DNA from: Selaginella moellendorffii | Lineage: Eukaryota; Plantae; Lycopodiophyta | Assembly: GCF_000143415.4 (NCBI RefSeq) | Contig: NW_003314265.1 | Span: 2,621,181 to 2,685,180, forward strand | Direction: 5' to 3' | DNA: 64,000 bases | Part shown: positions 13,491 through 47,065 of the stretch, one piece after another | Layout of the letters: every line of letters begins with the position of its first letter | Numbering within the stretch: the stretch's first letter is position 1 | Made by a program: the position numbers and the translations under genes | The notes under the pieces: generated by a model | Told to the model about the DNA's origin: nothing | Seen by the model: only the letters and a program-made list of their open reading frames with translations | Database searches by the model: none

Positions 13491-14707
13491 AAATAAATGA
13501 AGCATGGAAGGCCACATGAGGCACTAGCAGATATAAGACTGGAGCAGGGGAGGAAATAGCACGGCAGGGAATCCTTTAGAGTTAGGTCCATAATCGAGCT
13601 AATCCAAAATGCAAGTACCTGAAGAAGAGGAAACCAAAAACTTGTGATCTTGCCAGTACCTGCCAAACATTCTTCTTTAAAGAAAAGTTCATCCAGGATA
13701 GCTATGGATCCCAAAAGCTTGGAACTTATGTGTGGAAGTGGAAAAGAAGATATATAGCATGCTTTGATCAATGGGCATGGCTGTGGCAGGAAGTGAGCCA
13801 TGGCACGCTAGTCATTCTTGTGTCTATCCTGAGTATGGGAGCAACGCAGGTCCATTCCTTTTGGAGTTGTGGATGATGATAGGAGCAGGCTGAAAGGTGA
13901 TCTATCCAAGCTTTGCCTTGTCTATAATCTCGCAGGATTCTAGAGATAAAAAGGGGCTTTCCAAAATTTTGTCACTCTCATTTTTTTAACTGTTCTTCTT
14001 TTGCAACAGTTACTGTGACAACTTTTGGCCGGTGAAATAGGTCCAAACACACTTTGAGTTGATAGAGCTCAAGTGGGTATAAACCTGTCGACTTAATGAC
14101 CTCTCTAGCCCTTGCACAATGTTAAACATTTTTTTGCTGTGTGCTTTCAAGAATCTCTAATGAACTCATTGTGTCTCTTAATGATTCTTTTGCAAGTATC
14201 ATACATTGATAAACTCCTTTCTAAAAGCTTCGCATTTGCCACCTTTGCTACAAAGGTGTCTAACATAGTAGGCATCCAGCCCCTATCACGTAGCGACAAT
14301 CTTACATGAATGAATAGCTGGGTGAAAGGTTTTAGTTTAGCAAGTTCCTCACTAGAATGGGAAAGGGAGTCCACTTTCCAGCTTTTTCTACACACTCTTG
14401 AGACTCAACAAACTGCTTTGCAGAAAAATGGGGACATATCATCAAAGAACCTGTAAATCAATCATTCCACTAATGTCTTGGGCACTTGCATTCAACAATA
14501 GGATTGACAACACATGCTTGATGTGGTGTGATTTAGCCAATATGAAAACATTTTAGATTTAAAATAGGTTATGGATAATGCTATAATTAAAAATTTGAAC
14601 CATAGAATATGCTTAAAAATTATTTTATCTTATTTTTCTAGTTTGGTCCAACCTTTCAAAGTAATAGGAAAAAAGAATGAGAAAAATGTTTGAGTACCAC
14701 TTCGGTT

Positions 14708-28997: not shown

Positions 28998-30143
28998 TTA
29001 ATCAAGTAGTTTGAGCTGCTGCTGGACGTTCCAGAGCGTCTTGGCGGAGCCGCGGAGCTTGGCCGCCTCCTCCTCGGACAGCGGCGCGTTGACCACGCTA
29101 ACCACCCCATTCCGGCCGAGCTGGACTGGCAGGCTCAAGAACACCTCCTCCTCGATCCCGTGAAACCCCTTGGCCATGACCGACACCGGGCAGATCCTCC
29201 TCTGGTCCCGCAGGATGTTTCTTACGATGCTGGCAGTCGAGTAGCCGATCGCCCACGAAGTGTAGCCCTTGAGCCGGATCACCTCGTACGCGCTCTCCAC
29301 CACGCCGCGGTGTAGCTCTTCCAGCTCCGCAGAGGAGCTCGGGCCCCATTCCTCGCGGAGGATCCTCCCCGCGACGCTCACCGTGGACCACACCGGCACC
29401 GAGGAGTCCCCGTGCTCGCCCAGGACGTAGGCCTGGACGTCGCGGGCGTTGGCGCCCATTTGCTCGGCTAAAAGGAACCTGAGCCGCGCGGTATCAAGGT
29501 TGGTGCCGCTGCCAATGACCCGTGTCGCCGGCAGCACGCTGCCCGCAAGCTGCCACGTAGCCCACGCCAGCACGTCCACGGGGTTGGACACCACGAGCAG
29601 CACGGCGCCCGGGCTGTGCCGCACAAGCTCGGGCACTATCTTGCGGTACAGCGCGGCGTTCCGCGCGGTAAGGTCGAGCCGTGTCTCGCCCTCGCGCTGC
29701 CGCGCGCCGGCGGTGATGATGCACACGTCCGACCCGGCGGAGGCGGCGTAGTCGGTGGAGGCGGAGATGGTGGCGCGCTGAAGGAACGCGGCGGCGTGCT
29801 GGAGGTCGAGCATCTCGCCGCGCAGCTTGTCCGGGTTGACGTCGATGAGCGCGAGCTCCTCCGCAAGTTCCTGGGTGAGGATGGTCTGCGCGCACGCCAT
29901 CCCAACGTTGCCCACGCCCACGACGGTGACCTTGGCGCGCTGCTGCTCCGGGCTGGATTGGAGTGGGATGAAGAGGGATCCATGATCGCTACTGTTGGTC
30001 GCGGACAGGACTACGCGATTGAACCGGTGGGTTGTCGATCCTAGTCTAGAGAATGGCGATGACCTCTTGAGAGAGGAAGGAGATCGAAGGGGATTCACCT
30101 GGATTTGACCGGAGGATGGATCGATCGCCGCCGGCATTCTCAT
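28998..30143 (-). CDS. LDH: L-lactate dehydrogenase, intronless
   Basis: VGVGNVG Rossmann motif; AGARQREGETRLDL (Gln specificity residue of LDH); SNPVD; GSGTNLD; GEHGDS; KGYTSWAIG. Confidence 0.95.
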   Translation of the reverse strand: MRMPAAIDPSSGQIQVNPLRSPSSLKRSSPFSRLGSTTHRFNRVVLSATNSSDHGSLFIPLQSSPEQQRAKVTVVGVGNVGMACAQTILTQELAEELALIDVNPDKLRGEMLDLQHAAAFLQRATISASTDYAASAGSDVCIITAGARQREGETRLDLTARNAALYRKIVPELVRHSPGAVLLVVSNPVDVLAWATWQLAGSVLPATRVIGSGTNLDTARLRFLLAEQMGANARDVQAYVLGEHGDSSVPVWSTVSVAGRILREEWGPSSSAELEELHRGVVESAYEVIRLKGYTSWAIGYSTASIVRNILRDQRRICPVSVMAKGFHGIEEEVFLSLPVQLGRNGVVSVVNAPLSEEEAAKLRGSAKTLWNVQQQLKLLD

Positions 30144-33100
30144 CGCAGGGCAAAACACTTTTTTTTGGGAGAAAAAGTGTTCAACCCACGTGGCAAGGCA
30201 TATCACATCATGTAAATCGTATTCTTAACATGGAGCTCCCACAGCGGGCTCGCTGAGCCCAATTCGGCCTGGTGTTACAGAAATCTAAAATCCACTATGC
30301 AACTGCTTGGGCTGTGAGATATTGTGACTTGATACATTGCCGCAAAATTGGAAAATGTGTGAAACATTTCCTGTGGTTTAGATGGGTTATTGTTGGTTAC
30401 CTTACGGTTCATTCATTGCTTGATAAATGAATCGAATAGGAACTAGGAAGAGGTGCAGAATTCCAAGGTTATACATGCGTTAAGAACCCTAAATTTCACG
30501 TAACGAGTGAAATGCTGGGAACCTTATAGTAGAGGGTGGATTTTGTTCTCGCGGCGGGAGAATGCGATGCAAGTCCAAGAACCCTAGATTCTTTTCGAAT
30601 CGTTTGTAGCAAGTATAGGTGTTATTAAGGAAATCGCAAAGAGAGCAATACAAAAGAGTATTACATTAAATTTTACTGAAGTTTTTGAGCAAAAAGATCG
30701 GATGACTGAGCAGGCACAGCTGTTGACATTGCCAGCACAAAACACAACAATTATTTATAGTTGTTTATAAGGAGTTCGACGTCAAAGCGTGTGCTTAGAA
30801 CCTTCAAATTTCAAACTTGTTTTCGCTCCTTAGCCTCACGCATTGCTTTCGCGACACCTCCATATTCCAATTAATTTCCTCAAGTTTCCCTTCCCTTCTC
30901 ATACAACCTCCACTTATTTATTTGGTTGACACCCTGGAGTAATGGAAGGTCTCCCACTGAGGCCATATAAGCCCTTTTCCCCGCTAGAACATGGCATTCT
31001 CCTGCTCGCTGCTTGGCTATGAGGTTGGAGAGATCTGTTTTGCAGCACTGTTGCTGCTCCTGTCTCAGTTCCCCTCCACGCTCCCCATTCATCCAGTTCC
31101 TCTCGGGTTTCTTTGGCCGCGCCACATAGATGCCATTTTTGACCAGTGCCACTGGAGTACCTCCACTGGCACTGGTACAATCACTAACTCCTCAATCAAA
31201 AACGGCATCCATGTGGAGGTTAATGGGAACCGGAGAGCTCAGGTGAATCCAAGGAAAGCGGCAGAGCTGATCAGAGTGCCAAGGCTAGTATGTTGAGTCC
31301 GTTGTTGCTTATCACTGGCATCTCTTTAATCAATTGTTTTGAGAGCCAAGGATCCTCCTTGTAAAATTCTCCGCCCGTAATAAAAATTTCTCTTTGCTCT
31401 TCTCCTTTTCACTAGCGCAACCGTTAACGAGAGCTTTCTTGGCCAAATGGGAATCTGATCAAGAACAAGAAATGAGTCTGCCCATCCTGCGGCAGGAAGA
31501 TCCAATGCGCGTGTAGCAGTCAGGAATTGCTTCATTTTCATGGCGATTAGGAATTCACCGTCTCGACTCTTAATTCTCGAGCACAGAGATCTTTCAACTC
31601 CATGCATACCAGCAAGTCCTCTTGGGCATCTCTGACATGTTGCGCTCGGTTGACGAGTGGAGCTGCTTGATCATCAATATCCCCGCCACTGTGCGTCGAC
31701 TCAGTTTTTGCCACGTGTATGCCACATCATCAGTTAATCGCCACATCACCAATTAAATATTGGGCGGTTTTTATTTAACTAGAAATAATACACCCAGAAT
31801 ATCCTTATATATTCTAGGATATTCTTTCATCTAACTTTTAACTCTAGTACTTTGTTGGTAATTAAGGTTTAATGTTAATAGCCATACCTAAACATTTCCT
31901 TTTACGATTATGATTCACTATATTCTAAGTAATTTATCCCTCAACAGATATCTCACCAAAAAATCATGAATTCCTAAATACGTAAATATTATTCTCATAT
32001 ATGAGGAGCTGACCGATTCTTGGCACAGGATTGCAACTCGTTTTCTTGTTCTTACAAGAAAATGAGTGTGGGGATCGGCTCTTTGCACTGATTCTTGGCA
32101 TAAGAAGGTGAGGCCACATTAGTACAGGAGTAGAGAAATTTGAATAAGAGGAATTTTTATTTAACAACACCTTAATGGTTATTGACAATAACAAACAAAC
32201 TGTTGTCTTGTATTGCTCCTCTCTTGTCGTTGATGCCAATGATCAAGCTCAGCTTGATTAACGAAAAGGAAGAGAGGGGCAATAGGAGGAACCATCTAAA
32301 CATATGCATGGATGCTCCTACTACCTCCCCTTGCATGCACTCTTCAGTGTTGCTGCTGCCAGTGGATCTGCTCAAGCTAGTATCAGGAGATCTTCTAAAC
32401 ACAAGTCTGTGCCGTGGAAAAAGCCACTCTGTTAGAGTTTGCTATCACAGATTGGCCTTTTCCTTGCACTAACTTTCCTGTACAGGAGCTGCAAGAGGCA
32501 ACAGTGGCGAACTAGCCAAATAAGCCATGTGCGCTCTTTCTTCGCCACTAAGTGGTGCAGACACATGGTTCATCTCCTAGTGTTTCCACCCTCCACCAGT
32601 GGTAAGCATTACTTGAGGCAGAAAGGGCAGGAACTATCCATCTACCTATCTACCTCTATGCTGTTTTAATCATGCGGTGTGTCACATGAATGCATGGATG
32701 CAAGAATGCAACTTTTTGTCAGCGTATCTGAGCACTGAGAACGTCTGCACCGTCTTGCAGCGCCGTCGCAACTCCACCACTCACCACGTCTCCGTTGAAC
32801 ACTGGGAAGCCACGGGCGCTACCAAGATTTCCATAGAGAATGGAAGAGGATAGTATACGGGACGCCAAGAGGTGAGGTGGGAATTGAGAACGACTGCGGC
32901 CCCTTGCTGCACCAAGGTCCTCTTGACCCTCACCCCGCTCTTGACCTCACAAAAGGGATACAGGCACGGACTTATATGCTCTGAGGAGCTGGCTCCAGGG
33001 TGTCAACGCATAATCGAGTGCCATGGGTGTTGGAGTTTATGTGAGAAGGGAAAGGAGAAATGTGGAGGTGGCACCTGAAGTTTTAGGGCTCTTAACGGCA

Positions 33101-33240
33101 GAAAATCAGATAAGCACGAGGCTGAAAATATGGAACGAGGGCTGTGCGTGGCGTTTGATCGTAGCAAGGTCTTTGAGGAGGTTATGCCGCCAGCCTTGGT
33201 AAGCTTTGATCATGGCTCAATCTTCCATCCCTCAAGTAAT

Positions 33241-34090
33241 TCACAGAGCTTCGAAAATGCTCGTCTCCCTAGTGGCCTCCAGCGGGACAGTAACGTGTTG
33301 CAACTCCTTGACCTTCTTGGTGATGATCTCGAGCATGGAGATGGCTCCCTGACAGTGAGCAGCTTGCCACTGGACGAGCCTGTGCATACATGCAAGTGCA
33401 TCCCCAACATGTTGCGCTTCGTTGAAATGCCCGAGACCAGCTGCTTGCGATGTTTTTCTGGATGCGAACCTCTCTGAACTCTGGCACAATCCTTTAGAGA
33501 CGACGACGTAAAAAAGATATCTAAAAGGTACCTGGGTGAAGCTCCTCGCAAATCCGCTTCTCTGTCTTGGACTGTGTGCCGCCTGATCCGCTGGTCTTCC
33601 AGGATGTCGGCGGAGGCGAACTTTCTTCACTTCCAGAATAAATTCCTGCATGTCTCTGCAACGTTGCAGGACAAGATCTATCCATCTATATGCTGTTTTT
33701 AGTCTCGCTGTGCCCATTGAAAAGCATGAGACTGTATGCTATGCAATGCAATTGAATTCTTGCCTGCTGCTCAGGGATGCGGTTTGTACCTTCTGAGCTT
33801 CTTCTCCAGGTTTCTTTCTCCACCACTTTGGCCTTGAGCTCTTGTCCTGCCTTCTCACAAGTTCTGACATGTTAATGACTAGAGCTTCCTTCTACAACGT
33901 CAAGTCTGTCCTTCGCCATGCTCTCCCTGCTCACAAACTCACTTGATCGCTCTGTGCGCTAGTAGCTGTCCTTGCACAGAGAGAGGCTCCTCTTCCTGCT
34001 CTGCAATCTTTCGTTTTCTACGCAGAGCTGCTTCTCTGCTGCCACCCTTGCTTCCTGTAAAGCGAATTCTTGTCCGTTGTAAGCTTTCGT
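33241..34090 (-). pseudogene. Truncated, degenerate duplicate of the 3' part of the coiled-coil gene at 35368-37578
   Basis: Shared segments with intron sequence retained: RDMQEFILE, REVRIQK, GISTKRNML, GAISMLEIITKKVKELQHVTV; deletions and frameshifts. Confidence 0.8.
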
Positions 34091-34299
34091 CCCAGCACCG
34101 TCGACCATGCCAGAGCATCCGGTGAAAAAGAACCAGCAGTTCCACCTCCGTCACATCTTTCTCGCCAGGCTGCGGTAGTGCTCTCATCCATGCAAACCGC
34201 TTGCAGCTCCGCTGGACGGCATACACGCCGACAATGTTGTTCCACGACGCCACATTGAGCTTCGAATGAAGTTGTGTTTTTAGCCTGCTGGGATTTAGA

Positions 34300-34790
34300 A
34301 TTTAGTTTGTGTCACGGGATCAGTCCCAAGCACCATCAACTTCTTTCTGATGGTGGAGTTCCAGCAGTTCTTGATCTGGTAGTCCGTGCGACCGGGGAGC
34401 TTTGCAGACCATGTGCCAGTTATGTACAGGACAAAATTTCAGAAACAGTAGAAACATATTCATGACCCACCTGTTTCTCACAATTGCATGCATTTCCACA
34501 ATGAACTCCTTCAGAAATCACTGTGGTTGAGCCCCGGCCTCAGATAGTTGCAGCCTGCAGCTCTTCCCGCCTGTAACTAGCTCAGTGATCATCACAGACA
34601 ATTGTCTACGAAAGCTTCTCATGACTGATGTGTATATATGTACTAGCATGCTTTGGAACTTAACTCCATCGGCTGTGATCGTGCTTGAGCACGCACTCGA
34701 TCAATAACTCGTCTTCAAATGGCGACCATAGCCCACGCCGTAGCATTCCTTGCTCCAGGATTTGTCCTAGTACATACTAACTTCCATTCT
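34300..34790 (-). pseudogene. R2R3-MYB pseudogene
   Basis: LRRGLWSPFEDELLIECVLKHDHSRWS*VPKHA; GKSCRL..NYLRPGL (frameshifted); [32 protein letters not shown]; canonical three-exon layout with an in-frame stop. Confidence 0.85.
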
Positions 34791-35367
34791 CCAGTGAGAT
34801 CCAAACTGAAAACTTTACGTTCCTGGAGCTGTGCACTTGTTTGTGCCCAAGTACGAAAACATTCCTCTTCGAGTGACTATATAAAGTCATATAAAGAATT
34901 GTCGACATTGTTGCCGTGCTTCTACAGTTTCCTTCGAAAACCTTCGAAGTTGGCTGCGATTATCATTTCTTAAAAAAGATTCATGGTCTCAAGCCTTACC
35001 AAATCCTTGACGCTCAAGCTTTTCCTTCTTTTATAGATCAACTTGACGCAAGATGCCAAGGCTTTCGTATAATCAAGTCTGATACGCGTGAAACGCACCC
35101 GTAGACTACTCGACCAAAAATATTTCAGTACACATGTTTATAATTCATAAACGATTCAAATATCATTACGGAGGGAGTTTCTTCCTTTGCTTCTGGCGCC
35201 CGTAGAATTAAAAGACAAATCAGCTCATCGATAGATCACATCACATTGATATCGATGAATTCCCTCGAGTAATTTATATATATACAAAGAAAGCTATCTA
35301 GAATGCCCGTCTCCCTCCTGTCAAAAACCATAGCTGTGTGTACTACAGCACTGATGCCTATGGATCA

Positions 35368-37578
35368 TCAAGGCCTCCAATGGACAGTAACGTGTTGCAA
35401 CTCCTTGGCTTTCTTGGTGATGATCTCGAGCATGGAGATGGCTCCCTGCGCCACGAGGACAGTGAGCGGCTTGCCACTGGACGAGCATGCCCGTGCATAC
35501 CTGCAAGTGCCTCTCGGTCATCTCCAACATGTTGCGCTTCGTCGAAATGCCCGAGTCGAGCTGCTTGATCGTTGACTCGATGTTTTCCTTCTGGATGCGA
35601 ACCTCTCTCAAGTCTGCCAAGACAAATCCTTTAGAGAAGAAAACGTAAAAGAGAGCATGTACCTGAGCGAAGCTGCTTGTACTCCTCGCAAATCCGGACT
35701 AAGTCTGCTTCTACTATGTCTGAGTTTCCCCCTTTTCCTTGGACAGTGTACCGCCTGATCCGCTTGAGCTGGTCTTCCAGGTTGATAAACTTCGCTTGGA
35801 GGCGGAGGATGGCGGCAGTGGCGGACTTTATTTCCTCTTCCTTGGATCCCTGCTGAGTGTGGCATAATTGCTTAGAACGATCTTCCAGAATAAATTCCTG
35901 CATGTCTCTGCAACGTTGCAGGACAAGTGAAGAGCGTGGGGTCTTTCTAATGCATGAAGGAGAGATACGGTTTGTACCTTCTTCCTTCCACTTGTTTGAG
36001 CTTCTTCTCCAGTGCGTCGATCTTCGAGGACTTCACTCTCACGTCGCTCTCCAGCCTGCTTTTCTCCACCACTTTCTCCTTGAGCTCTTTCGCAAGGTTG
36101 TCTTTCTCAGCCGTGACGGCTGTGAGTTGCTTGGACAAGTTCTCCTTCTGGGAAGAAATGCTAGAGACTTCTTTCGTTAGAGCTTCCTTCTGCGACGTCA
36201 AGTCTGTGATTTCCTTAGCCATACTCTCCCTGCTTTTCACAAACCCGCCGATTTGATCGCCCAAAGCATCTATCTGTGTTCGAGTAGCTTTGAGATCTTC
36301 CTCTAATCTGTCTTTGCACAAAGAGAGGCTCCTCTTCTCCCTCTGCAATCCTTCGTTTTCTACGCAGAGAAGCTGCTTCTCTGCTGCCACTCTTGCTAAG
36401 TTCCTGTCAAGCGAATCCTTGTCCGACGTTATCCTCCCTATGCTTCCCTCTAAACTCTCTGCATGTACAGTCAGCCTTCTACAGTTTGTCGCAAGAGCTT
36501 CTTTCTCCGAGTGCGCGCTTTTCATGTCCTCTTCAAGACGTTCCTTCTCAAACGCCACCTCCTTCAGATTTTTGGCCAAGCTGTCCTTCTCGGATGTAAT
36601 GCTCGATATGCTTTCCTCAAGACGGTCCTTGTGCAAAGTTAGCCTCCGGATGTTATCTTCCTTTTCGAACTGCGAGGTCTTATACTCTACATGAAGACGC
36701 TCCTTCTCAGCAGCAACCTGGCTCAAATTCTTGACCAACGCTTCTCTCTCGGAGGCGATGTTCGTCTTCTCCTCCACAACTTTGTTGAGATTCCTCGCCA
36801 GACTTTCTTTCTCAGCCGCAAAGCTGCTGAGTTCTTTCTGAAGCCTTTCTTTGTCCACTGTGAGCCTCCTCACCGCCGCATTGACGTTTTCCTCCCGGTT
36901 GATAAACTCGGAGAGCTCTCGGAAAATCCGGTCTTTATCGCTTCGAGCTTGCCACAGCTCCTTCGTCAGGCTCTCTTTCTCTGCAACCGTCTGTGAGCCA
37001 ACTATCCCTTTCTCAAATCAGCAAGCAATAACACAAAGGTGTGTGAAGCTGTCAAGGAGAAGTACCTGGTTGTGTGCTGCTTGGAACGCATCCAAGCTAC
37101 TCTCCATCTTGGCGATGAATCCCAACACGTAGTGGAGCTCCTCCACGGCCTTGTTCCTCGATTTCATGATCTCCTCGATCTTGGAATGGAGGTTGACGTA
37201 GTACTCGTACATCTTCTCCACAAGCGCGCACGTCTTCTGCTCCATGAAGCTGCTATAATCGCTGCAAAACACCGTGTTCTTCTCCATCTCCTGGAGCGCC
37301 GAATTTCTCTCGTCCTGGAGCTGCCGGATTTCCACCTCCAGCGCGTCTGGCGAGCTCATCTCGACGCACTCGTCGCACTCCGTGATCTGGACGGGGATGA
37401 ACACCGGATCCATCTGCATTTCCAGCACCATATCGCGAAGCTTGGCCACCTCCTTTCGGATCGACAGATGCTTCTCCTCAAGAACCAAGCTCCTCTTTTG
37501 CGCCAGGAAGTACAGCGCCTCGAGATCCTTTTGTGCATCGGATTCGTGCGGCACTGGCCTGACCTCTATGAATGCCAT
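35368..37578 (-). CDS. Long coiled-coil protein of unknown function; exons ~37578-37066, 36990-35978, 35907-35663, 35613-~35502, ~35445-35368
   Basis: Heptad and 14-residue EKxxL repeats; GT-AG introns keep the frame open; ends GAISMLEIITKKAKELQHVTVHWRP*. Confidence 0.75.
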
Positions 37579-37869
37579 GAGAAATCGCCGCTGCTCCTCC
37601 GATACCGATCGATCTATAGCTCACTCACTTGGATTACGCACAAGATGATCGCCATCGCCCTTGCTGCCCTTGGGAGAAATCCCGCCCTAGGGTTTTCGAA
37701 AATTTACACACGTCCTTTCATTTACACCGCTTCCACAGCAGCGCACACGTGGTGGCCAGCCAGTGGCCCAAGCACCGCGGTTTCGGGGTCAATGGTCCAG
37801 TCAATTTTCAACGTTCCATTCAAACTTGGCAAAATGCCAATCGAACGGCTGAAACTTAAAAGTACCTCG

Positions 37870-38880
37870 AGTTAAGGGCTTTGTCTGCCGCCAAAGTAAC
37901 CAATGTAGCTCCATAAGGCCTCGCATGAGCGTAGAAGCACTCGGCCATCGCCTGGAAGGATATCTAGCGTGATTTTCTTGCGAGAAGATGAAATCATAGA
38001 AAGGGAACTTACAGTTCCATTCTCTGATGTTAAGTCCGAGGATCCTCGCGAGAAGAATGAATGAACTCCTTCCTTGGGCTGTGGAAAACCAAGAACAAGT
38101 AAGTGATAGGTTGATCGAGACAGAGCAGCTTACTTTGTCTCTGGGATCTTTCTGCGGTGGCGATAGCATCGCTCCGGCTCTCATCGTCATGCTGTTGGCG
38201 AAGCCATACGTGGTCCCTTCTCTCGAAGTTCGTGACTTGTCCAGGATGATCCTATCCATCTGTGAAGAACTTTTGATCTTTAAGCTATGGAAAAGAATGC
38301 TTTTGTAGTTACCTGAGGAGGCTTTGGTCTTGGCGGAGGTGGAGGAATGGGCCGTTTCTTTGCTCCAGCAAAATATGGCATCTTCGGGCGTTTCTTGGGC
38401 TCGGGAGCCGTTTGCAAGCGATCGTAGTAGGCTCCGAGCACAGTCCTGATTTACCAAAACGTTCTTTTAAGGAAGAAGAGGGAAGAATTTACCGTGGGTC
38501 GTCTTGCAGCTTAAGTTCGTGACGAACGCGTTCTAGCCTGTGGAATGAACTCTCGGGTATCCTGGAAAAACAGAAAGCCTTTGTCGCAACAGAAGCTTGT
38601 GTTAAACGGACCTCTCTTCTAGATGAGAGTCGCAGTCGGTATCATCACACGTTGATCTTTGGCCACACTTTGGACTCGCTGTCCTCGGTTTCTTTGAAAA
38701 CAAGTCGATAGGCCTGATAATTCTCGGTGGTTTCTGCAAGGATAGTCCACCATTATCAACCAAAACAAAAGAGAAGAAGAAGAAGAAATCCACCTGTACG
38801 AACCAAGACCGACAGAAACGTCACTCTAACTCAAGATTCCCAGAAGAAAAAAGAGAAAAATAAATAAAGAAAACCATCTC
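37870..38880 (-). CDS. Multi-exon Pro/Lys-rich protein of unknown function (ends uncertain)
   Basis: Regular ~50-60 nt GT-AG introns separating open exons KPPRIIRPIDLF.., IPESSFHRLERVRHELKLQDDPR, TVLGAYYDRLQTAPEPKKRPKMPYFAGAKKRPIPPPPPRPKPPQ. Confidence 0.5.
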
Positions 38881-38977
38881 TGCGGTTGTCGAAGCTCTAG
38901 CTAGAAACGACGTTGTTGAACTTCTTTGTCCATTTATTTTCGAGCCGCTAGGAAGCAACATTCTTTGGAAGAGCCAT

Positions 38978-39808
38978 CTACTGCTGCTGCTTTTGGTCCT
39001 CGGGAGGCAGATCCTCCTTCCTACACCCGCAAGAGCTGTGACGATTTAAGTACTGTATTTGCTCCACCGGACTTAGCAACTGGAGCTGCCGCGGTTTCTT
39101 TCCCGCTGTCTCTGCAATCACGCTAGCTTTCCTCGGGAGCTTCTTCGACTTGGCTCGAGTCGGCCTAGTTTTGGCAGCGCTCCGAGCCTCAGCTCTCTCA
39201 GCTAGCAGTATAGCATCGGACAGAGAACCCGGCCTCAAGGCAGTCACCTCATTTCTGATCTTAAACTTGAGCCCAGCAGTGAACCTGCGAAGCTGCTCCT
39301 CGTTGCTCAGCGACTGCACCCCCATCATCTCCATCCGTAGCTTCCAAAACCTTTCACTGTAATCACCAATAGTTTCCTTTTCACCTTGCTCAAATCCCAT
39401 CCATGCTTGCATTACCTTCTCTCTGGAATGATGAAATCCCGGCAAGCAGACCTGGTCCTTGAAAGCCCACGTCTTTCTCGGCGACTTCTGCCTATCAAAA
39501 ACCGTGCTTGCGACGGCGGTCGACGCATTGTTGCCATAACTTCCACCACCACCACCTTCGTCAAAACTCGCCAGCCAAGAGAGAACCTTGTCGGCCTCGG
39601 ACGACGTCAGGAGCCTCTCGTTGATCCGTGGAGTCTCCTCCCTACTGCCGCTAATGCCCACTTCTCTCCTCCTCGGTGTCTGAGAAGACTTCGCCCTCAA
39701 ACGCTCGAGTTGTACCTCCAGATCCTGGCACTTCCCCCGCTCCTCCACAAACAACTGTTTGAGACTGTCAAGCTGCTCCTTAATCTGCCCAAGCTTCTTC
39801 ATTTGCAT
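38978..39808 (-). CDS. Solo Ty3/gypsy-type Gag (Retrotrans_gag capsid) protein with N-terminal coiled coil, 276 aa
   Basis: VLSWLASFD..TWAFKD..FEQGEKETIGDYSERFWKL (QGxxE-x-xxY-xxRF, MHR-like)..EEQLRRFTAGLKFKIRNEV..PGSLSDAILLAERAE; intact ORF; no protease, RT, integrase or LTRs seen. Confidence 0.75.
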   Translation of the reverse strand: MQMKKLGQIKEQLDSLKQLFVEERGKCQDLEVQLERLRAKSSQTPRRREVGISGSREETPRINERLLTSSEADKVLSWLASFDEGGGGGSYGNNASTAVASTVFDRQKSPRKTWAFKDQVCLPGFHHSREKVMQAWMGFEQGEKETIGDYSERFWKLRMEMMGVQSLSNEEQLRRFTAGLKFKIRNEVTALRPGSLSDAILLAERAEARSAAKTRPTRAKSKKLPRKASVIAETAGKKPRQLQLLSPVEQIQYLNRHSSCGCRKEDLPPEDQKQQQ

Positions 39809-39964
39809 GCTGTCCGTCTGCTTACACCATGCCTTACCCCCTCATGAAAAACCAAAGCTCTTGCGCAAAACAGGCACGAAAAAAACCAAAGGACATGACA
39901 CGAAGAGACATGACCCAAGCAAAACCACCCGAAACATTCATCCGCGGTAAAGGAGAAAGTTTAC

Positions 39965-40580
39965 CTTGTCACGGTACCACGTATGCTCCTGCTCGGGCTC
40001 CGTGTCAAGGCGTCGCTGGATCAAACTCATGTCCTGCATCGTCGAGTGGTATGGTGCGTACTGTGGACAACTCGGCTTGTACTTAAGCGGCGGCTTGGAT
40101 GGTTTCTTCTTCTCTCCCGGGAGAGGATACTTCTCATCGCAGAAATCATACCTGTGTCAAACTCCGATCAATCAGACCAACTTTGGAGCTGGGAGCGAGA
40201 GAGACTTACTTGTATTTCGGGAGGCCCATCGGGAACTGGAACTTCTTGTTCATCTCAATGTTGTTTAGCACCTTCATGTACTGACCATAGTCTCGAGTGC
40301 GTGGAGGATAGTCCGAAGGCTCCGGAGGGGCCATCTAGAAAAACGAAAAGGATTCTAGAACGAACGATACGCGCAAGAACTTACCGCCCTCATGTAGGAG
40401 GTCTCGAATCGCCCCAGGCATTTCTTCTTGGTGTCTCCCATCTTTCGTTTCTCCTTCTCTTGTCCAAACTCCAAACCGGGAAGAACGATCACAGGCCAGC
40501 TAGAGGCGAGCTTATCAGGAGAAGTGGAGAGAGCGACGAGGAAGGGACAAACTTACACGGAGGAGGATCAACCATTGCAA
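39965..40580 (-). CDS. Multi-exon protein of unknown function (3' end unresolved; may splice to the Gag ORF or end just upstream of it)
   Basis: Exons MGDTKKKCLGRFETSYMRA|MAPPEPSDYPPRTRDYGQYMKVLNNIEMNKKFQFPMGLPKY|YDFCDEKYPLPG..HTWYRDK with GT-AG introns; telo-box at 40745. Confidence 0.5.
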
Positions 40581-41158
40581 TTGCAATGCATTCCCCGGAA
40601 ACGAATGAGGCGCCAGCACGGAAATTCCATGCCCGCGCCGCCGCACAGCTCTAGCGCTTCCCAAATGCGGCACCGCTTCCCTCGTCGCGCTCGCGACGCG
40701 CAAGGCCGGTTGCCCATTGGAGAGACACGACGGCTCAGCTGAAGAAACCCTAAAAACCCGGTACGGACACTCTGCCACGTGGCACGCGTACGCGCAAGGA
40801 ATATACCCGTTCTTAAAACTAAACCAGCCGCTAACTTTTCTCGTTGCCGTTTCGCTGTATTTTATTGCCCTAGAAAGCTAGAAAAGCCCCCAAGCGGCGC
40901 TGTTAAGGCGTGTGATTCGGGCTAGGGTTATTGGAATGCGGGGCGCGTCATCGCAGCCGGCATAGCTTCGTGCGCAAGGTGAGCGGCTGCGACGGCAGAT
41001 TGGGGGATCCGAGCGCCGCGGCAGTGGGAATTTCTAGGGTTCTTCGCGGGGGGCGCATGAGCAGGGATTTGTTATCCGTGGAGCTTGCAGGATTGAAGAG
41101 TGTTATAGGACGTTTGGATTAGCGCCATCACGAAGAAAAGTGGGTCGCACCAGTTGCC

Positions 41159-42199
41159 ATGTCTGCGGCTGTTTGTCAGAAGCGGCATTTTGACGAGCTA
41201 CACGGGTCTCCTCCAATCTCGACTCCCCTCTCCAAGAGACGCTGCGGTGGGAATTCGAATTCTCCAGTTCGTTTTCCCTCGGCGGCTCCGGTTTTTGGCC
41301 GGAGCAGCTCTCCTGGTACCACTGGGCCGAGCTCTCCTTCCTCCTCGTCACACGACATCTTTCTCCAGCTCAGAGCTTTGTATCCTGACATGGATGGACA
41401 GGTAAAACCGTGTTCTTTTCTTCAAAGAGAAAAGAAGCTTTCTTTTCCTGAAGTTGACATTGTGACATTTTTTTTTTCTCTCTTTTTTCGCCAGCTTGTC
41501 GAGAAGGTCATTGAGAACTGTGGAAACAATCTAGACGATGCCATCAAATGCCTTAACGATTTGCGGCTCTCAAACGAGAGGCCAGCGGTGAGCAGTGCTT
41601 CGCAGCACGCGCCAGCAGCGTCGGCCCACCAGCAGCAGGAACAGCCAGCGAGCAGCGAAGGATTAGAATGGGTGGAGCTCTTCGTGCGGGAGATGCTCAG
41701 TGCCTCAGACCTCACAGACGCTCGCGTGCGCGCAACCAGAGCACTGGAGTCTTTCGAGAAGGCCGTCACGACTCGAAATGCCGCTGCAGTGGAAGCCATC
41801 CAAAAGGTGTGGATTTTTCTCTTTCACTGGCTGCTCGCTAAGCTACTGCTGCGTGTTTCCATATGTTTCTAGGAGAATGAAACGCTCAAGGGGCAGCTCC
41901 AAGTGATGGTGAAAGACAATGGAATCCTCAAGCGGGCAGTGGCCATCCAACACGAGCGCTACTCGGCGGAGATCGACGAGAAGGGGAAGGAGGTGAAGCA
42001 TTTGAAGCAACTCGTGACACAGTACCAGGAACAAATGAGGACTCTAGAGGTAAGCCAAGCCATCGCTCATTGCTTTCGTGGCATGAATAATCCTTTTGTG
42101 TCATGTTCACAGCTTAACAATTACGCGCTCACCGTCCACCTGAGAAGAGCCCAAGACAACAGCTCCATCCCGAATCGCTACAACCCGGACGTGTTCTAA
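41159..42199 (+). CDS. CUE domain-containing plant protein (ubiquitin system component Cue family)
   Basis: MSAAVCQKR; LRALYPDMDGQLVEKVIENCGNNLDDAIKCLNDLRL; EWVELFVREM; NGILKRAVAIQHER; NNYALTVHLRRAQ..PDVF*. Confidence 0.92.
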
Positions 42200-43019: not shown

Positions 43020-43410
43020 AGCCCACAATCAGCCGCGTAACCCTCAAACAGTTGACACAACACTTGGTGATGAAGTTTTCTCCGGGACTTGGAAGCGCCT
43101 GGAAAGCAGGATGAGGACGGGATCATCTCACGAGCATCATCCAATTCGTCTGATGACAGAGAGCAGACAAGACATTTGGAGCACAAGCAAGCTTTCTTCC
43201 TACACAGTATTGTGGGTTCATCAGTACCTGGATTGCGGACGGACTGTTGGATAGTGGTGGTGGCATTGGCGCATTGACAAGAGAGTGGCAGTAATCCGCC
43301 ATAGAACCAGAATTTTCCAAAGGCTCAACTTTGCGCCACGATCAGAGCATAGACAGTCTTTTAAGCTTGAAGGATACCTTTGTACTCATCTTTTATTCTT
43401 GGACATTAAC
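43020..43410 (-). pseudogene. Degenerate partial duplicate of ~47330-47755
   Basis: Near-identical blocks, e.g. GGAAAGCAGGATGAGGACGGGATC, CAAGCTTTCTTCCTACACAGT, TGGCGCATTGACAAGAGAGTGGC, TGTACTCATCTTTTAT; deletions break the frame. Confidence 0.8.
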
Positions 43411-43449
43411 TCTACAAACATAGTAGTAATTAAGGGAATAAGATGTAAA

Positions 43450-46400
43450 GGATGGGAAAACTTTCATTCAAATTCTTGATTGTGGAGAAGCTAGTGAGAA
43501 ATTTTATTAAAAATATTCAACAATCTATGTTTTTCTTTTTTATTTTTTGATTCTAGGAAGCTAAAAATCTTTTTAAAAATATATAAGAATATCACTAGTT
43601 AACTTCTTTTGTTTTCTCTGTTTCTTAAAAGTCATATCCATATCCTAGAGTTTTATTAAGTGCATAATCTACAAAATCAAGTGTATAACACTATACAATA
43701 TTTTTGTTTGCAAAATGACCTTATAATGTAAATAAGTACATTAATAAAAAACTTTTATTACTGAGTACAAAAGAAAAAGAAGAAAATCCAACAAAAACTC
43801 AAATGCAATATCGAAAAAACTTATAATATTTTATCATTTTTTATACCACGATATTAATGGTAAAGTGTGTCCCAAATTTATTGAGTAATTTAGATATTTG
43901 CATTGTCTTTGAGTTTTTATTATGGATAGGATTTTTTTTTGTGCTTAATAACAAGACAAGTTTCCCAAAAGTACCTCTTCTGAAAAACTTAAATTATAAA
44001 TTTTTTAGATATGCAAAAATAACATTAATTAAATATATACTATTTATATCTCATTAATTTCATTACAAATGTATTTCTAGTTTAGTACCCCTCACTTTGT
44101 AAAGAGTATGATAGCACACATAGATATTGAGCATAGATTATAGAATATAGATTTAAAGTAATAGAAAATAAAAAGTTAACTACTAAATATCTCATTAGTT
44201 TTATTAATTTATCTTCTTTAAAATAAAAACTAAAACGTAAATTAAATACAAATCTAAGATGATTGATTGATCAATTGCCTCAAACGACCAAGACAACTAA
44301 AATTAAATAAAAAATTTTTAGGTTATCAATCTCGAGAAGCTCAAGGGACTCTCCATATATAAAAGGTGAGCTCCTTTCTTTCTTTGAAAATTTATATTTT
44401 TATATTAATTTTAAATGAGATTAATTATAAGAAATTTTATAGAAATAATATAAAGCCACAATGTAAAGTTAGAGTAAAATATTAATATAAATATTTAATC
44501 ACACAATGTGCATTCAAGTTCTAGAGAAAATATATAGTTATATATAAATATTTAAAAAAAGTGGATTTCTTACTTCTATAATTAATAATTGAAGAAAAAA
44601 ACATAGATTTAATGAGATTTGTTACTAATATTCAATAATTTTAATTAAAAATAAATATAGTACCAGAAATAATATTATATATGATATTATTCAATACAGT
44701 ATAATTTATAAAAGCATAATTGTTAATTTTGTCAAAAGTGAACTTTAGGTGGGAGCATATGTTTCATTTTTTCAAAACTAAAATTAATTCTATATTAAAT
44801 TTATTTATAAAATGGCTGTGGACTAAACAAAACTTATCAAAATTTAAATATGTTATTTTTTTATAAAAAAAATAATTTACTAATAAATATTTATATAAGG
44901 ACATAATGAAAATTAAATAAAAGCTAATATTATGGTAGTCTCAATGAACTTCAAATAATAAATAACTTTTAATGATAAAATCAGTATATTTTTTATTGAG
45001 GAGTTTGAGAAAAAAAATATATTATAAAATCATATATTTAAAATATTTATTTTTATAATAATATATAATTATATTATTTAGAAATTATATTTCAGAATTA
45101 TACTCCAGTATTTGAAATTTTATATTTTAAAATTTTTTTGGAACTCAACTATCTGAAAAATATTTTGCATAAGTGAAAAGTTTATAAAACCTTTTTTTAT
45201 CATTTTTTAGTAATATAAAGCTTTAATCATCTTATGAGATCTAAGTATATCGCTACGATGCCATATACTAATATTAATATAGTGAGATTTTGATAGCCAT
45301 CATATTAGTTTCAATTTTGACCATTTGCTCCTAGTAGAGATGAAAAGTAATTGTGATTGTACCTAATAAGTACTTGAATTTATGCTTTTGTTTTAGATGT
45401 AACTTTTGCATCATCTAGATATCTCTTATTATTATAACTTTTTCAATTTCTTTTCTTTTTTTTCTTTTTGTTCATCTTCATGGCAAATCAATAACCTCTT
45501 CCTCCTTTGACTTTGAAGCAATAATTAATGTGATTGTTTGATGTTATGTGATTGCAATTGAACAATTAGACTTATTTGGTAATGTCATTCATGGTATGTG
45601 GTGTAGTTCCTTCCACTCTTATTGCCAATCTTTGTGAACTTCTTTCATAGGAATCTTGAATGATATATATTATTGGTTCAATCAATTTTTAGTGATTGTC
45701 ATCATATAAAATGGATGATATGGTGTTGGTTTGTTTTCCCAATTTTATAGTATATACTTTGTTTAATAGGCTTCGTGCTTAGTGGAAAGGATTATATTGA
45801 GTATTACAGTAAGTTGGATTGCAAATTTATAAAGTTTGACATGTTATTCAACAAGCTAATCCTTAAAGAACTATGTATGTACAACAATTAAAACCCTTCA
45901 TACAAAAGGATTTAGAATAATTTACACTTTTTAGAGATTCACTGGTGCCTCCTTTTGATATTCTTCCAAATTCTAACCCATGGATTAGGGAACCTTAAGG
46001 GCTTTCCATCCTTCTAAGAGGAAGGAATGACATGAGGTCCAAGTGTATATCTATAATGTTGTATATTAATTTTAACATTTTTAGTATAGTAGGATTTTGA
46101 CAATTATTGAATTGATTTTAATTTGGACCATTCATTTTTGTATATAAGCTAGTGTTTTTGGGCTAATTGAATATGTATATTTATATATTCCATTTCTGTA
46201 TTTTATGCACTCACAATCTTTATAAAATTTCAATTTTAAACTTCTATTTCCAAATTTCTACTTATTAAAGGAGTTTGAAAGCATTAAGATAAATACTTAA
46301 AACAATAGAATATTTATTTTTTATGGTGAAATATTATTATATAGATTTTTATATTGAAAAGTTTGGGGCATTTATATCCTTCTAATCTTTCATTTACATA

Positions 46401-47065
46401 TTAAAGTTAATATTTTAACTTTTAATTAATATATCTATATTATCAATATTTATTAAAAAATTTATGAAATTATTTTTTATAATTTACCAACTTAATAAAA
46501 CAATTTAATTAACTTTTAGTTACAGATAATATTCTTTTTATCTATATTATATTATAATTATTTTTATATAAATTATTTTTATTGTTGAGATTGAGGTCTA
46601 GAAGACAATGCATGAAATTTAAATCTTAAAAATATATTTATTAAAAATTAATTAATATTTTCTTTATATATATTATGTCTTATGTATAAAATATCCTTTA
46701 AAATAATAGAATTCATTAATATTTTAGTTAAAAGTTTTTATGAATTATAATCAAAACATGTTTACAAACTCAATGATATGTTTGATTTTTGTTTATCAGT
46801 TTATTAATTATATACAAATTTCATTATTAAAAAGAATAATTTATTTCTAATTTTTTAAAAATTACAATTCCATATAAACTTATTTATGTACTACAGCATT
46901 TATTATATAATATTTATGTTATTTTCATGAAATTTTTTAAGGTTTAGAGTAAGAGAATGACAATCCTCTTTTACAAAAAACAACAAGATGGGGAAAAAAA
47001 TTTGTATTTGAGACCTCATATATTTTGATTAACTATTTTGAAACTTCAAGTTTAAAGAGAATATT
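43450..47065. other. ~3.6 kb extremely AT-rich tract, probably a decayed repeat or TE
   Basis: Very low GC, strong CG depletion, essentially no ORFs. Confidence 0.75.

What the first reader, a model, noticed from the sequence alone, without database searches (positions are those of the whole stretch)
38978..39808. Intact solo Gag-capsid gene with Arc-like architecture: candidate domesticated retrotransposon gene
Seen: an uninterrupted 276 aa ORF with an N-terminal coiled coil (LGQIKEQLDSLKQLFVEERGKCQDLEVQLERL), a low-complexity linker and a Ty3/gypsy capsid region (W..F, QGEKETIGDYSERFWKL, RRFTAGL..IR..V..P.SL.DAI.LA). A basic tail follows with no CCHC knuckle. No protease, RT, integrase or LTRs are visible, and it is packed within ~100-160 bp of host exons on both sides. 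Nearby non-functional sequences (PPR, MYB, duplicates) are visibly decayed, whereas this ORF is not. Known: Arc, PEG10 and PNMA are animal Gag domestications that form RNA-carrying capsids. Inference: a plant analogue that may form virus-like particles or restrict TEs.
Basis: partly seen in the sequence, partly recalled or inferred. Interest (0 to 1): 0.75.

Follow-up and report, generated by a model that had tools for sequence, protein, structure and literature searches.

The report
Gag remnant spliced onto flagellar gene
The open reading frame is real and comes from a retrotransposon capsid (gag) gene, but it is not a stand-alone gene: it sits inside an intron of a conserved sperm-flagellum gene of the spikemoss Selaginella moellendorffii, is annotated as an alternative last exon of that gene, and keeps only half of the capsid fold, so an Arc-like capsid is unlikely.

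Summary
The 276-aa ORF at 38978-39808 (minus strand) exists and is gag-derived. It scores at the Pfam Retrotrans_gag threshold, and its nearest relatives are Ty3/gypsy-type Gag proteins at 24-46% identity.

The "solo, Arc-like" reading fails on three points.

1. The "host exons on both sides" belong to one gene, S. moellendorffii LOC9654811. The ORF lies in sense orientation inside its intron 3.
   - RefSeq isoform X2 (326 aa) skips the ORF. It aligns end to end with 322-aa fern proteins and matches the Chlamydomonas microtubule inner protein FAP129.
   - Isoform X1 (402 aa) splices exon 3 in frame onto the gag ORF as an alternative last exon. An AATAAA lies 39 nt after the stop.
   - Isoform X3 truncates before the capsid core.
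2. Only the capsid C-lobe is intact. It is predicted at pLDDT above 90 and superposes on the PEG10 CA C-terminal domain (TM 0.8). The N-lobe has lost its A..WW core helix, and the zinc knuckle is cut after its first two cysteines.
3. No LTR, pol or second copy is present in the window.

Best reading: an exonised gag remnant that diverts host transcripts and adds a self-associating helical module. Whether it is under selection is unresolved. Interest is moderate to low.

The parts
38978..39808 (-).
   Evidence: One search lists the ORF. It is 100% identical to residues 127-402 of XP_024524411.1 (P0001).
38978..39817 (-). Coding part of the gag-derived alternative last exon of LOC9654811 isoform X1 (279 codons plus stop). 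The acceptor is ...aagcag|ACG, 9 nt before the ATG.
   Evidence: P0001 maps exactly to the window. The rebuilt X1 CDS equals P0001.
39683..39805 (-). Long N-terminal helix or coiled coil (ORF residues 2-42). None of the Gag hits has a homologue of this part.
   Evidence: AF2 predicts helix 2-42 at pLDDT 92-96. The heptad pattern is shown.
39434..39604 (-). Degenerate capsid N-lobe (ORF residues 69-125). The first helix (ADKVLSWLASFDE) and last helix (KTWAFKDQVCLPGF) are kept. The central A..WW helix is replaced by a shorter G/S/N-rich stretch (residues 85-101, 39506-39556).
   Evidence: Alignment A1. pLDDT is 39-54 here, against 67-81 in control P0010. The Pfam match starts at model position 21 of 97, whereas the control covers 1-96.
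39170..39433 (-). Intact capsid C-lobe (CA C-terminal domain; ORF residues about 126-213; five helices).
   Evidence: pLDDT is 92-98. Foldseek matches the PEG10 CA C-terminal domain 7lga (TM 0.80-0.82, rmsd 1.9 A, 85-88 columns) and the HIV-1 CA CTD.
39086..39178 (-). Basic linker or tail (ORF residues 211-241).
   Evidence: Read from the sequence. pLDDT is low.
39017..39076 (-). Vestige of the pre-knuckle helix and the first half of the CCHC zinc knuckle (LSPVEQIQYLNRHSSCGCRK). The His and the last Cys are absent.
   Evidence: Alignment A1 against CCHC-bearing Gags P0008, P0010, P0011 and P0033. No zf-CCHC Pfam hit here, whereas the controls have one.
38933..38938 (-). AATAAA, a candidate intronic poly(A) signal 39 nt after the stop codon.
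   Evidence: Its use is inferred, not shown.
39818..39964 (-). Intron between host exon 3 and the gag exon in isoform X1 (147 nt, GTAAAC...AAGCAG). The polypyrimidine tract at the acceptor is weak.
38734..39964 (-). Intron 3 of the canonical isoform X2 (1231 nt). It contains the whole gag exon. The gene's other introns are 47-61 nt.
39357..39415 (-). Inferred 59-nt GT..AG intron inside the gag exon. It would explain isoform X3 (257 aa, TGA immediately after the junction) and removes the start of the C-lobe.
   Evidence: The rebuilt X3 equals P0034. Four acceptors are possible. This one fits the local intron size.
39965..40441 (-). Host coding exons 1-3 (40385-40441, 40210-40334, 39965-40151) with introns 1 and 2. 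They encode the 123 N-terminal residues shared by all three isoforms.
37856..38733 (-). Host coding exons 4-9 of isoform X2 (38612-38733, 38493-38561, 38313-38445, 38134-38259, 38013-38078, 37856-37951). They encode the conserved FAP129-like C-terminal 203 residues that X1 lacks.
   Evidence: The fern alignment is and the FAP129 match.

Best explanation
The ORF is the remnant of a Ty3/gypsy-type retrotransposon gag gene. It lies in sense orientation inside intron 3 of a conserved FAP129-like gene of Selaginella moellendorffii (LOC9654811); FAP129 is a flagellar microtubule inner protein.

Shown here:
- The canonical mRNA (isoform X2, 326 aa) splices over the ORF.
- An annotated alternative mRNA (X1, 402 aa) splices exon 3 in frame to an acceptor 9 nt before the ORF's ATG and ends in the gag exon. 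An AATAAA follows the stop by 39 nt.
- X1 therefore carries the first 123 host residues fused to 279 gag-derived residues. It lacks the conserved, FAP129-like C-terminal 203 residues.
- The gag part keeps a long N-terminal helix, an intact capsid C-lobe and a basic tail.
- The N-lobe core helix and the zinc knuckle are broken. LTRs and pol are gone.

Inferred:
- The element acts on the host gene as an alternative terminal exon, a natural gene trap. It diverts part of the transcripts away from the full-length flagellar protein.
- The peptide it adds can at most self-associate, through the coiled coil and C-lobe dimerisation, much as the SCAN domain does. It is unlikely to build a closed capsid.
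- Whether the peptide is maintained by selection is open. I put about 0.4 on a selected protein-level role and about 0.5 on a neutral or merely regulatory exonisation.
For: Gene architecture:
- Searches give RefSeq isoforms X1, X2 and X3 for LOC9654811 and the same three for the allelic LOC9661835.
- Searches show that all three proteins are reproduced exactly from window exons with GT..AG introns.
- Intron 3 is 1231 nt, against 47-61 nt for the gene's other introns.

X2 is the ancestral form:
- It aligns end to end at 31% identity with 322-aa Adiantum proteins that have no gag part.
- UniRef names one of them "Flagellar associated protein".
- The family profile matches Chlamydomonas FAP129 in doublet-microtubule structures 6u42 and 8glv, E = 7.4e-5. 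FAP129 is described as a microtubule inner protein with Mn and PYG repeats in PMC10973386.

Gag origin:
- Pfam PF03732 scores 24.2 against a cut-off of 24.1.
- All gag-region hits of the exhaustive HMMER search are retrotransposon Gag proteins or fragments, several with CCHC knuckles or an adjacent retropepsin.
- The family profile hits the PEG10 CTD, Ty3 Gag and Arc in the PDB.

C-lobe only:
- (window ORF) against the control.
- The A..WW residues that the window ORF lacks are the most conserved N-lobe core residues, and N-lobes form the capsid's penta- and hexameric rings (PMC8121366).

Other points:
- No other TE parts or copies are in the window.
- CpG o/e is 0.79, in the genic range, unlike the CpG-depleted AT-rich blocks of the window.
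- All five allelic amino-acid differences in the gag exon fall outside the confidently folded parts (p about 0.04).
Against: - The isoforms are RefSeq predictions (XP_ accessions). I could not see the transcript evidence, so the use of the acceptor, the poly(A) signal and the internal 59-nt intron is not demonstrated here.
- The acceptor has a weak pyrimidine tract, so X1 may be rare.
- The low N-lobe confidence could partly reflect the shallow 15-sequence alignment. The control argues against this, but it is a single control.
- The allelic amino-acid difference rate is about six times higher in the gag exon (5/279) than in the host exons (1/326). Fisher p = 0.10, so constraint on the gag exon is at best weaker than on the host protein.
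- Self-association is inferred from homologous domains and was not tested.
Confidence: 0.65

Rival explanations
1. Neutral relic. A fragment of an LTR retrotransposon happened to remain open-reading and happens to be spliced at low level. Isoforms X1 and X3 are splicing and polyadenylation noise with no selected protein function.
For: - The acceptor is weak.
- Isoform X3 destroys the C-lobe by an internal intron.
- The allelic amino-acid difference rate is higher than in host exons.
- The N-lobe and the knuckle are already broken.
- No orthologue is known.
Against: - 279 codons are stop-free although every other part of the element has been deleted and the N-lobe was remodelled in frame.
- The C-lobe still gives a very confident fold.
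- No relative above 46% identity (over full-length matches none above about 34%) exists among 1.84 billion representatives, including annotated Selaginella proteins. This argues against a young copy of a living family.
- The allelic differences avoid the folded parts.
- CpG content is genic.
Confidence: 0.45
2. Selected chimeric protein. The gag C-lobe plus coiled coil has been exapted as an oligomerisation module on the N-terminal part of the flagellar protein. This would be analogous to the vertebrate SCAN domain (a CA C-terminal domain fused to host proteins) or to the Crtg10-KELP and Crtg14-PEX14 fusions.
For: - The fusion is in frame and annotated in both haplotypes.
- Only the dimerising lobe is preserved, and at high confidence.
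- dArc C-lobes crystallise as homodimers (PMC8121366).
- Gag-host fusions are known in plants and fungi (PMC8321522).
Against: - No conservation data are available.
- X1 drops the conserved FAP129-like half of the host protein.
- The acceptor is weak.
- No experimental evidence exists for the protein.
Confidence: 0.3
3. Truncated-Gag restriction factor. The N-lobe-deficient Gag acts as a dominant-negative inhibitor of capsid assembly of related Ty3/gypsy elements, like Ty1 p22, mouse Fv1 or sheep enJS56A1.
For: p22 is the C-terminal half of Ty1 Gag and blocks VLP assembly (PMC7055915). The window ORF likewise keeps the C-terminal lobe.
Against: A dominant-negative factor needs a closely related target Gag, and none was found among annotated proteins. 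Expression would be tied to a flagellar gene promoter.
Confidence: 0.08
4. A stand-alone domesticated gag gene with Arc-like architecture that forms RNA-carrying capsids.
For: - The ORF has its own ATG, stop and downstream AATAAA.
- It has an N-terminal helix plus a capsid-like region, as in Arc.
- It has a basic tail.
Against: - Only 147 nt separate it from host exon 3, and all annotated transcripts start at the host promoter.
- The N-lobe core helix with the A..WW motif is missing.
- The model matches single-lobe CTD structures only, whereas a control Gag matches two-lobed dArc1, PNMA2 and Ty3 capsids.
- N-lobes make the capsomer rings.
Confidence: 0.04

Closest known systems
[quoted passage not shown]
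   Same: A retrotransposon gag coding region has lost pol and the LTRs and is joined by splicing to a host gene's coding exons.
   Different: - Those genes are conserved above family level with selection and expression evidence. Here conservation is unknown.
- The four plant cases are all in angiosperms.
- Here the gag part is an alternative last exon competing with the canonical isoform, and the N-lobe is degenerate.
SCAN domain of vertebrate zinc-finger proteins (derived from a Ty3/gypsy CA C-terminal domain; from my own knowledge, not tested here)
   Same: Only the capsid C-terminal lobe is retained, and it is attached to a host protein where it would serve self-association.
   Different: - No SCAN structure appeared among the listed Foldseek matches.
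- SCAN is an N-terminal module of transcription factors. This one is a C-terminal module on a flagellar-protein fragment.
- Dimerisation is untested here.
Arc/dArc1, PEG10 and PNMA (animal domesticated Gag capsid genes)
   Same: - Ty3/gypsy gag origin.
- An N-terminal helix followed by capsid homology.
- The C-lobe superposes on the PEG10 CA C-terminal domain (7lga; TM 0.8, 22-24% identity).
   Different: - Those are independent genes with a complete two-lobed CA, and they assemble capsids.
- Here the N-lobe core is missing and the ORF is an exon of another gene.
Ty1 p22 / Fv1 type truncated-Gag restriction factors
   Same: A Gag protein lacking a complete N-terminal capsid part but keeping the C-terminal part.
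   Different: p22 comes from an internal transcript of an active element and targets its own family. No related active family is known here.
Chlamydomonas FAP129 (doublet-microtubule inner protein with Mn and PYG repeats; PDB 6u42, 8glv). This concerns the host gene, not the ORF.
   Same: The conserved C-terminal half of isoform X2 and of its fern homologues matches FAP129 residues 320-458, E = 7.4e-5.
   Different: - The host protein is 326 aa against 483 aa.
- The N-terminal 123 residues shared with the gag isoform are not covered by the match.
- Orthology is not established.

Membership tests
Ty3/gypsy-type retrotransposon Gag (Pfam Retrotrans_gag PF03732 / Ty3_capsid PF19259) | Profile match at or above the curated threshold | tested here: inconclusive
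   PF03732 scores 24.2 bits against a cut-off of 24.1 for the ORF and 23.5 for the full isoform X1. It covers model positions 21-96 only. PF19259 scores 17.6, below its cut-off of 29.1. Control Gags score 47-48 bits.
Ty3/gypsy-type retrotransposon Gag | Nearest relatives are retrotransposon Gag proteins | tested here: met
   All gag-region hits of the exhaustive search are gag-domain proteins or fragments, some with CCHC or retropepsin next to them. The profile hits Ty3 Gag 6r22, E = 2e-3.
Ty3/gypsy-type retrotransposon Gag | Two-lobed capsid (CA N-lobe plus C-lobe) | tested here: not met
   The C-lobe is confident and matches CA C-terminal domains. The N-lobe has pLDDT 39-54 and has lost the A..WW helix. 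The control is two-lobed.
Ty3/gypsy-type retrotransposon Gag | CCHC zinc knuckle after CA | tested here: not met
   Only C-x-C-R-K remains before the tail ends. There is no zf-CCHC hit.
Intact LTR retrotransposon | LTRs, protease/RT/integrase next to gag | tested here: not met
   No flanking direct repeats, no pol ORFs and no other copy in the window.
Arc/PEG10/PNMA-like domesticated capsid gene | Independent transcription unit | tested here: not met
   Every annotated product containing the ORF starts with host exons 1-3.
Arc/PEG10/PNMA-like domesticated capsid gene | Orthologues at the syntenic site under purifying selection | not testable with these tools
Only allelic proteins could be compared.
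Arc/PEG10/PNMA-like domesticated capsid gene | Assembly into capsids | not testable with these tools
   This needs expression and EM. The missing N-lobe core argues against it.
TE exonisation as alternative terminal exon (gene-trap type) | TE-derived sequence inside an intron, same strand, with splice acceptor, stop and poly(A) signal, competing with the canonical splice | tested here: met
   The acceptor is at 39817, the stop at 38978 and AATAAA at 38933-38938. Canonical X2 skips the exon. Usage levels were not measured.
FAP129-like flagellar microtubule inner protein (host gene) | Sequence match to FAP129 and occurrence in plants with motile sperm | tested here: met
   The profile matches 6u42_7I, E = 7.4e-5. 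Homologues were found only in Adiantum ferns and Selaginella. No Pfam family matches.

The most novel reading that the evidence does not exclude
A lineage-specific chimeric protein of the sperm flagellum or spermatid. The N-terminal microtubule-lumen-binding part of a FAP129-like protein would be fused to a self-assembling Gag module (coiled coil, CA C-lobe and basic RNA-binding tail), maintained by selection. It would give a lycophyte a SCAN-like or Arc-like function in the male gamete, for example oligomeric scaffolding or carriage of RNA into the egg.
Probability: 0.05. Interest if true: 0.8.

Novelty: new member of a known kind. Interest (0 to 1): 0.35.

Why it matters
Gag co-option in plants is documented only for four angiosperm gene families (PMC8321522), and none is known in lycophytes. 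If this exon proves conserved and expressed, it would be the first seedless-plant example. It would also show a route to domestication through alternative last-exon capture by a host gene rather than through a free-standing gene.

The host is a sperm-flagellum protein. That gives a precise tissue to look in: antheridia and sperm.

If the exon is neutral, it is an ordinary case of TE exonisation. It is then mainly a warning that intact ORFs flanked by "host exons" may be parts of the same gene.

Tried and rejected
- **Word-index protein search with the ORF and with residues 1-126 of P0001.** Only self and allelic hits came back. Because that tool is length-limited, the exhaustive HMMER search was run with P0001. 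It found 10 hits, no polyprotein and no other Selaginella protein.
- **PDB sequence search with P0001 alone.** Nothing was found.
- **BFVD fold search.** Only weak Gag hits, which add nothing.
- **Search for LTRs, TIRs, target-site duplications or other copies in the window.** None was found.
- **Rfam and tRNA scans.** Nothing lies in or near the intron.
- **Reading Banks et al. 2011 for haplotype divergence.** The paper is not held. PMC3095285 only says that allelic cDNAs differ by 7-9 bp. My neutral-expectation estimate therefore stays qualitative.
- **Endogenous pararetrovirus coat protein.** Considered and rejected, because the Pfam and HMMER relatives are retrotransposon Gags, one cluster with an adjacent retropepsin.
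- **The old JGI model EFJ34905.1 (1303 aa) as evidence of a giant protein.** Considered and rejected. It skirts the stop codon and merges three genes.
- **Hand-joined spliced models.** Searches used the database's own proteins by id. Exon joins were only checked for identity in a script.
Full report
**1. The observation**

- Pfam places residues 106-181 on Retrotrans_gag (PF03732) at 24.2 bits, just over the 24.1 cut-off. The match covers model positions 21-96 only.
- Ty3_capsid scores 17.6, below its cut-off of 29.1.
- The ORF is real and gag-like, but the family signal is marginal and partial.

**2. Where it sits**

The word-index search returned only Selaginella moellendorffii proteins. The ORF is 100% identical to residues 127-402 of XP_024524411.1, LOC9654811 isoform X1 (P0001, 402 aa).

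Cluster look-ups show three RefSeq isoforms for this locus, and the same three for LOC9661835 on another scaffold. That second locus is the other haplotype of this two-haplotype assembly (PMC3095285).

I mapped all three isoforms onto the window. CDSs rebuilt from window exons reproduce them exactly, with canonical GT..AG introns.
- **X2 (326 aa, P0037).** It uses nine coding exons from 40441 down to 37856. Its intron 3 (38734-39964, 1231 nt) contains the whole ORF. The other introns are 47-61 nt.
- **X1.** It splices exon 3 (ending 39965) in frame to an acceptor at 39817, 9 nt before the ORF's ATG, and ends at the ORF's stop. AATAAA follows 39 nt later.
- **X3 (257 aa).** It is explained by a 59-nt GT..AG intron inside the gag exon (39357-39415) that runs straight into a TGA. 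This is an inference. Three other acceptors would give the same length.

So the "host exons on both sides" are exons 3 and 4 of one gene, and the ORF is an intronic insert modelled as an alternative last exon.

No hand-joined model was sent to any search. Searches used the database's own proteins by id, and joins were only checked for identity in a script.

These isoforms are predictions.

**3. The host gene**

- X2 aligns end to end (31% identity, both termini conserved) with 322-aa proteins of the ferns Adiantum nelumboides and A. capillus-veneris. These carry no gag part.
- UniRef calls the latter "Flagellar associated protein".
- A profile of the family matches Chlamydomonas FAP129 in the doublet-microtubule structures 6u42 and 8glv, E = 7.4e-5 over the C-terminal half.
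- FAP129 is a microtubule inner protein with Mn and PYG repeats (PMC10973386).
- No Pfam family covers the host protein.

X2 is therefore the ancestral form. X1 replaces its conserved 203-residue C-terminal half by the gag remnant.

**4. What is left of Gag**

The exhaustive HMMER search with P0001 against 1.84 billion representatives gave only 10 hits at E <= 1e-3.
- Apart from the allelic entries and the fern host homologue, all are retrotransposon gag-domain proteins or fragments.
- They come from Escallonia, Adiantum and metagenomic eukaryotic fragments. Identity is 24-46%, and about 34% or less over longer matches.
- Several have CCHC knuckles or a neighbouring retropepsin.
- There is no polyprotein and no other Selaginella protein among them.

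The alignment shows three things.
- The ORF's C-terminus (LSPVEQIQYLNRHSSCGCRK) aligns with the LTxEE...CFxCxxxGHxxxxC of these Gags. It ends after the second Cys, so the zinc knuckle is cut in half.
- The block from QAWMGFEQGEKETIGDYSERFW to SLSDAILLAERAE aligns throughout.
- In the N-lobe the first and last helices align, but the central helix with the A..WW motif is replaced by a shorter G/S/N-rich stretch.

Structure prediction with this 15-sequence alignment gives pLDDT above 90 only for helix 2-42 and for about residues 126-213 (five helices). Residues 50-124 score 37-54.

Foldseek against the PDB finds the PEG10 CA C-terminal domain (7lga; TM 0.80-0.82, rmsd 1.9 A, 85-88 columns) and HIV-1 CA C-terminal domains. 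Only one lobe matches.

As a control, the fern transposon Gag P0010 was modelled with the same shallow alignment.
- Its N-lobe scored pLDDT 67-81 and its C-lobe 75-88.
- It matched two-lobed dArc1 (6tap, 152 columns, TM 0.63), PNMA2 and Ty3 (6r24, 158 columns) capsids.
- Pfam covers model positions 1-96 in the control and finds its knuckle.

According to PMC8121366, the A/W/W residues are the most conserved N-lobe core residues, N-lobes make the penta- and hexameric rings of the capsid, and C-lobes form homodimers.

The remnant therefore keeps a dimerising lobe and has lost what is needed for capsomer rings.

**5. Other context**

- There are no LTRs, flanking repeats, pol ORFs or second copies in the window.
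- The neighbourhood is gene-dense. It holds LDH, a coiled-coil gene, a DUF155 protein, an HD-domain protein, a DOMON-cytochrome b561 protein, an intact PPR, a cellulose synthase, a RING protein, an LRR kinase and an aldose epimerase.
- CpG o/e of the gag exon is 0.79. The host CDS has 0.95 and neighbouring genes 0.77-1.08. Two AT-rich blocks of the window have 0-0.48. This is no sign of long-term TE-type methylation, though it is only a proxy.
- GC3 is 0.64 against 0.60 for the host CDS.

**6. Selection**

Only allelic proteins could be compared.
- The gag exon has 5 differences in 279 residues. The host X2 has 1 in 326 (Fisher p = 0.10). Constraint on the gag exon is at best weaker than on the host protein.
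- All five differences lie outside the confidently folded parts (p about 0.04).
- For selection: the frame stays open although all the rest of the element is gone and the N-lobe was remodelled in frame; the C-lobe fold is very confident; and no close relative exists in a very large database.
- Against selection: the weak acceptor, isoform X3, the lack of any known orthologue, and the bias of having been picked for being intact.
- I leave this open, at about 0.4 for a selected role against about 0.5 for a neutral one.

**7. Mechanism**

*Shown:* the gene architecture and the domain content.

*Inferred:* the insert acts as an alternative terminal exon.
- It diverts transcripts from the full-length flagellar protein.
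- It yields a chimera of the 123 N-terminal host residues with a coiled coil, a CA C-lobe and a basic tail.
- The chimera could self-associate, and so works like a SCAN-type module.
- Capsid formation is unlikely (about 0.04).
- A p22-like dominant-negative role needs a related active family, and none was seen (about 0.08).

**8. Comparison and novelty**

The closest documented cases are gag-host fusions among co-opted gag genes (Crtg10-KELP and Crtg14-PEX14). The four plant co-options known are all in angiosperms (PMC8321522).

This locus is a new, unproven member of that kind, in a lycophyte and in alternative-last-exon form. It is not a new kind of system. Interest is 0.35.

**9. Limits**

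I had no access to transcript data, the other haplotype's DNA, other lycophyte genomes, genome-wide copy number or methylation. These are listed as the decisive next steps.

Noticed in passing
window 1966-2447: A tRNA-Leu(CAG) at 1966-2046 is followed by a partial match to SRP RNA at 2180-2328 (Rfam RF00017, model positions 102-249 of 299, 79.8 bits). The 3' end of that match overlaps a 68-nt tandem duplication at 2309-2447. It is either an SRP RNA gene poorly fitted by the metazoan model or a truncated or duplicated copy.
   Followed up: no
window about 12200-14300 and 43300-46600 (also 4200-5900): AT-rich blocks (GC 0.16-0.40) with strong CpG depletion (CpG o/e 0-0.49) sit in an otherwise GC-rich, gene-dense window. 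They are probably methylated repeat or TE relics. No large ORFs lie in them.
   Followed up: no
window 48921-50708 (+): An intact 595-aa PPR ORF with very strong PPR Pfam matches.
   Followed up: partly
window about 33000-40441 (-); protein P0036: The old JGI model EFJ34905.1 (1303 aa) fuses three things into one protein: the FAP129-like gene, the gag exon (skirting its stop codon through a short invented exon) and the downstream coiled-coil gene (ORFs 35947-36873 and 37018-37578). This is very likely an annotation artefact.
   Followed up: partly
window 39357-39415 (-): A 59-nt GT..AG interval inside the gag exon has the size of this gene's normal introns (47-61 nt). It would explain RefSeq isoform X3, which stops just before the capsid C-lobe.
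   Followed up: partly
window 40442-41158 and ORF 41159-41872 (+): The FAP129-like gene is head to head with a plus-strand ORF of 237 aa that has no Pfam match. About 720 bp separate the two start codons, so the region may be a bidirectional promoter.
   Followed up: no
proteins P0004 and P0005 (Escallonia rubra): The best gag-region hits are proteins made of two to three tandem repeats of a gag domain. This is an odd arrangement that inflates their scores. It may reflect tandemly duplicated gag fragments or a mis-assembly.
   Followed up: no
window 28998-30206 (-): A long ORF encodes an L-lactate/malate dehydrogenase with an N-terminal extension of about 90 residues. The extension may be a transit peptide.
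   Followed up: no
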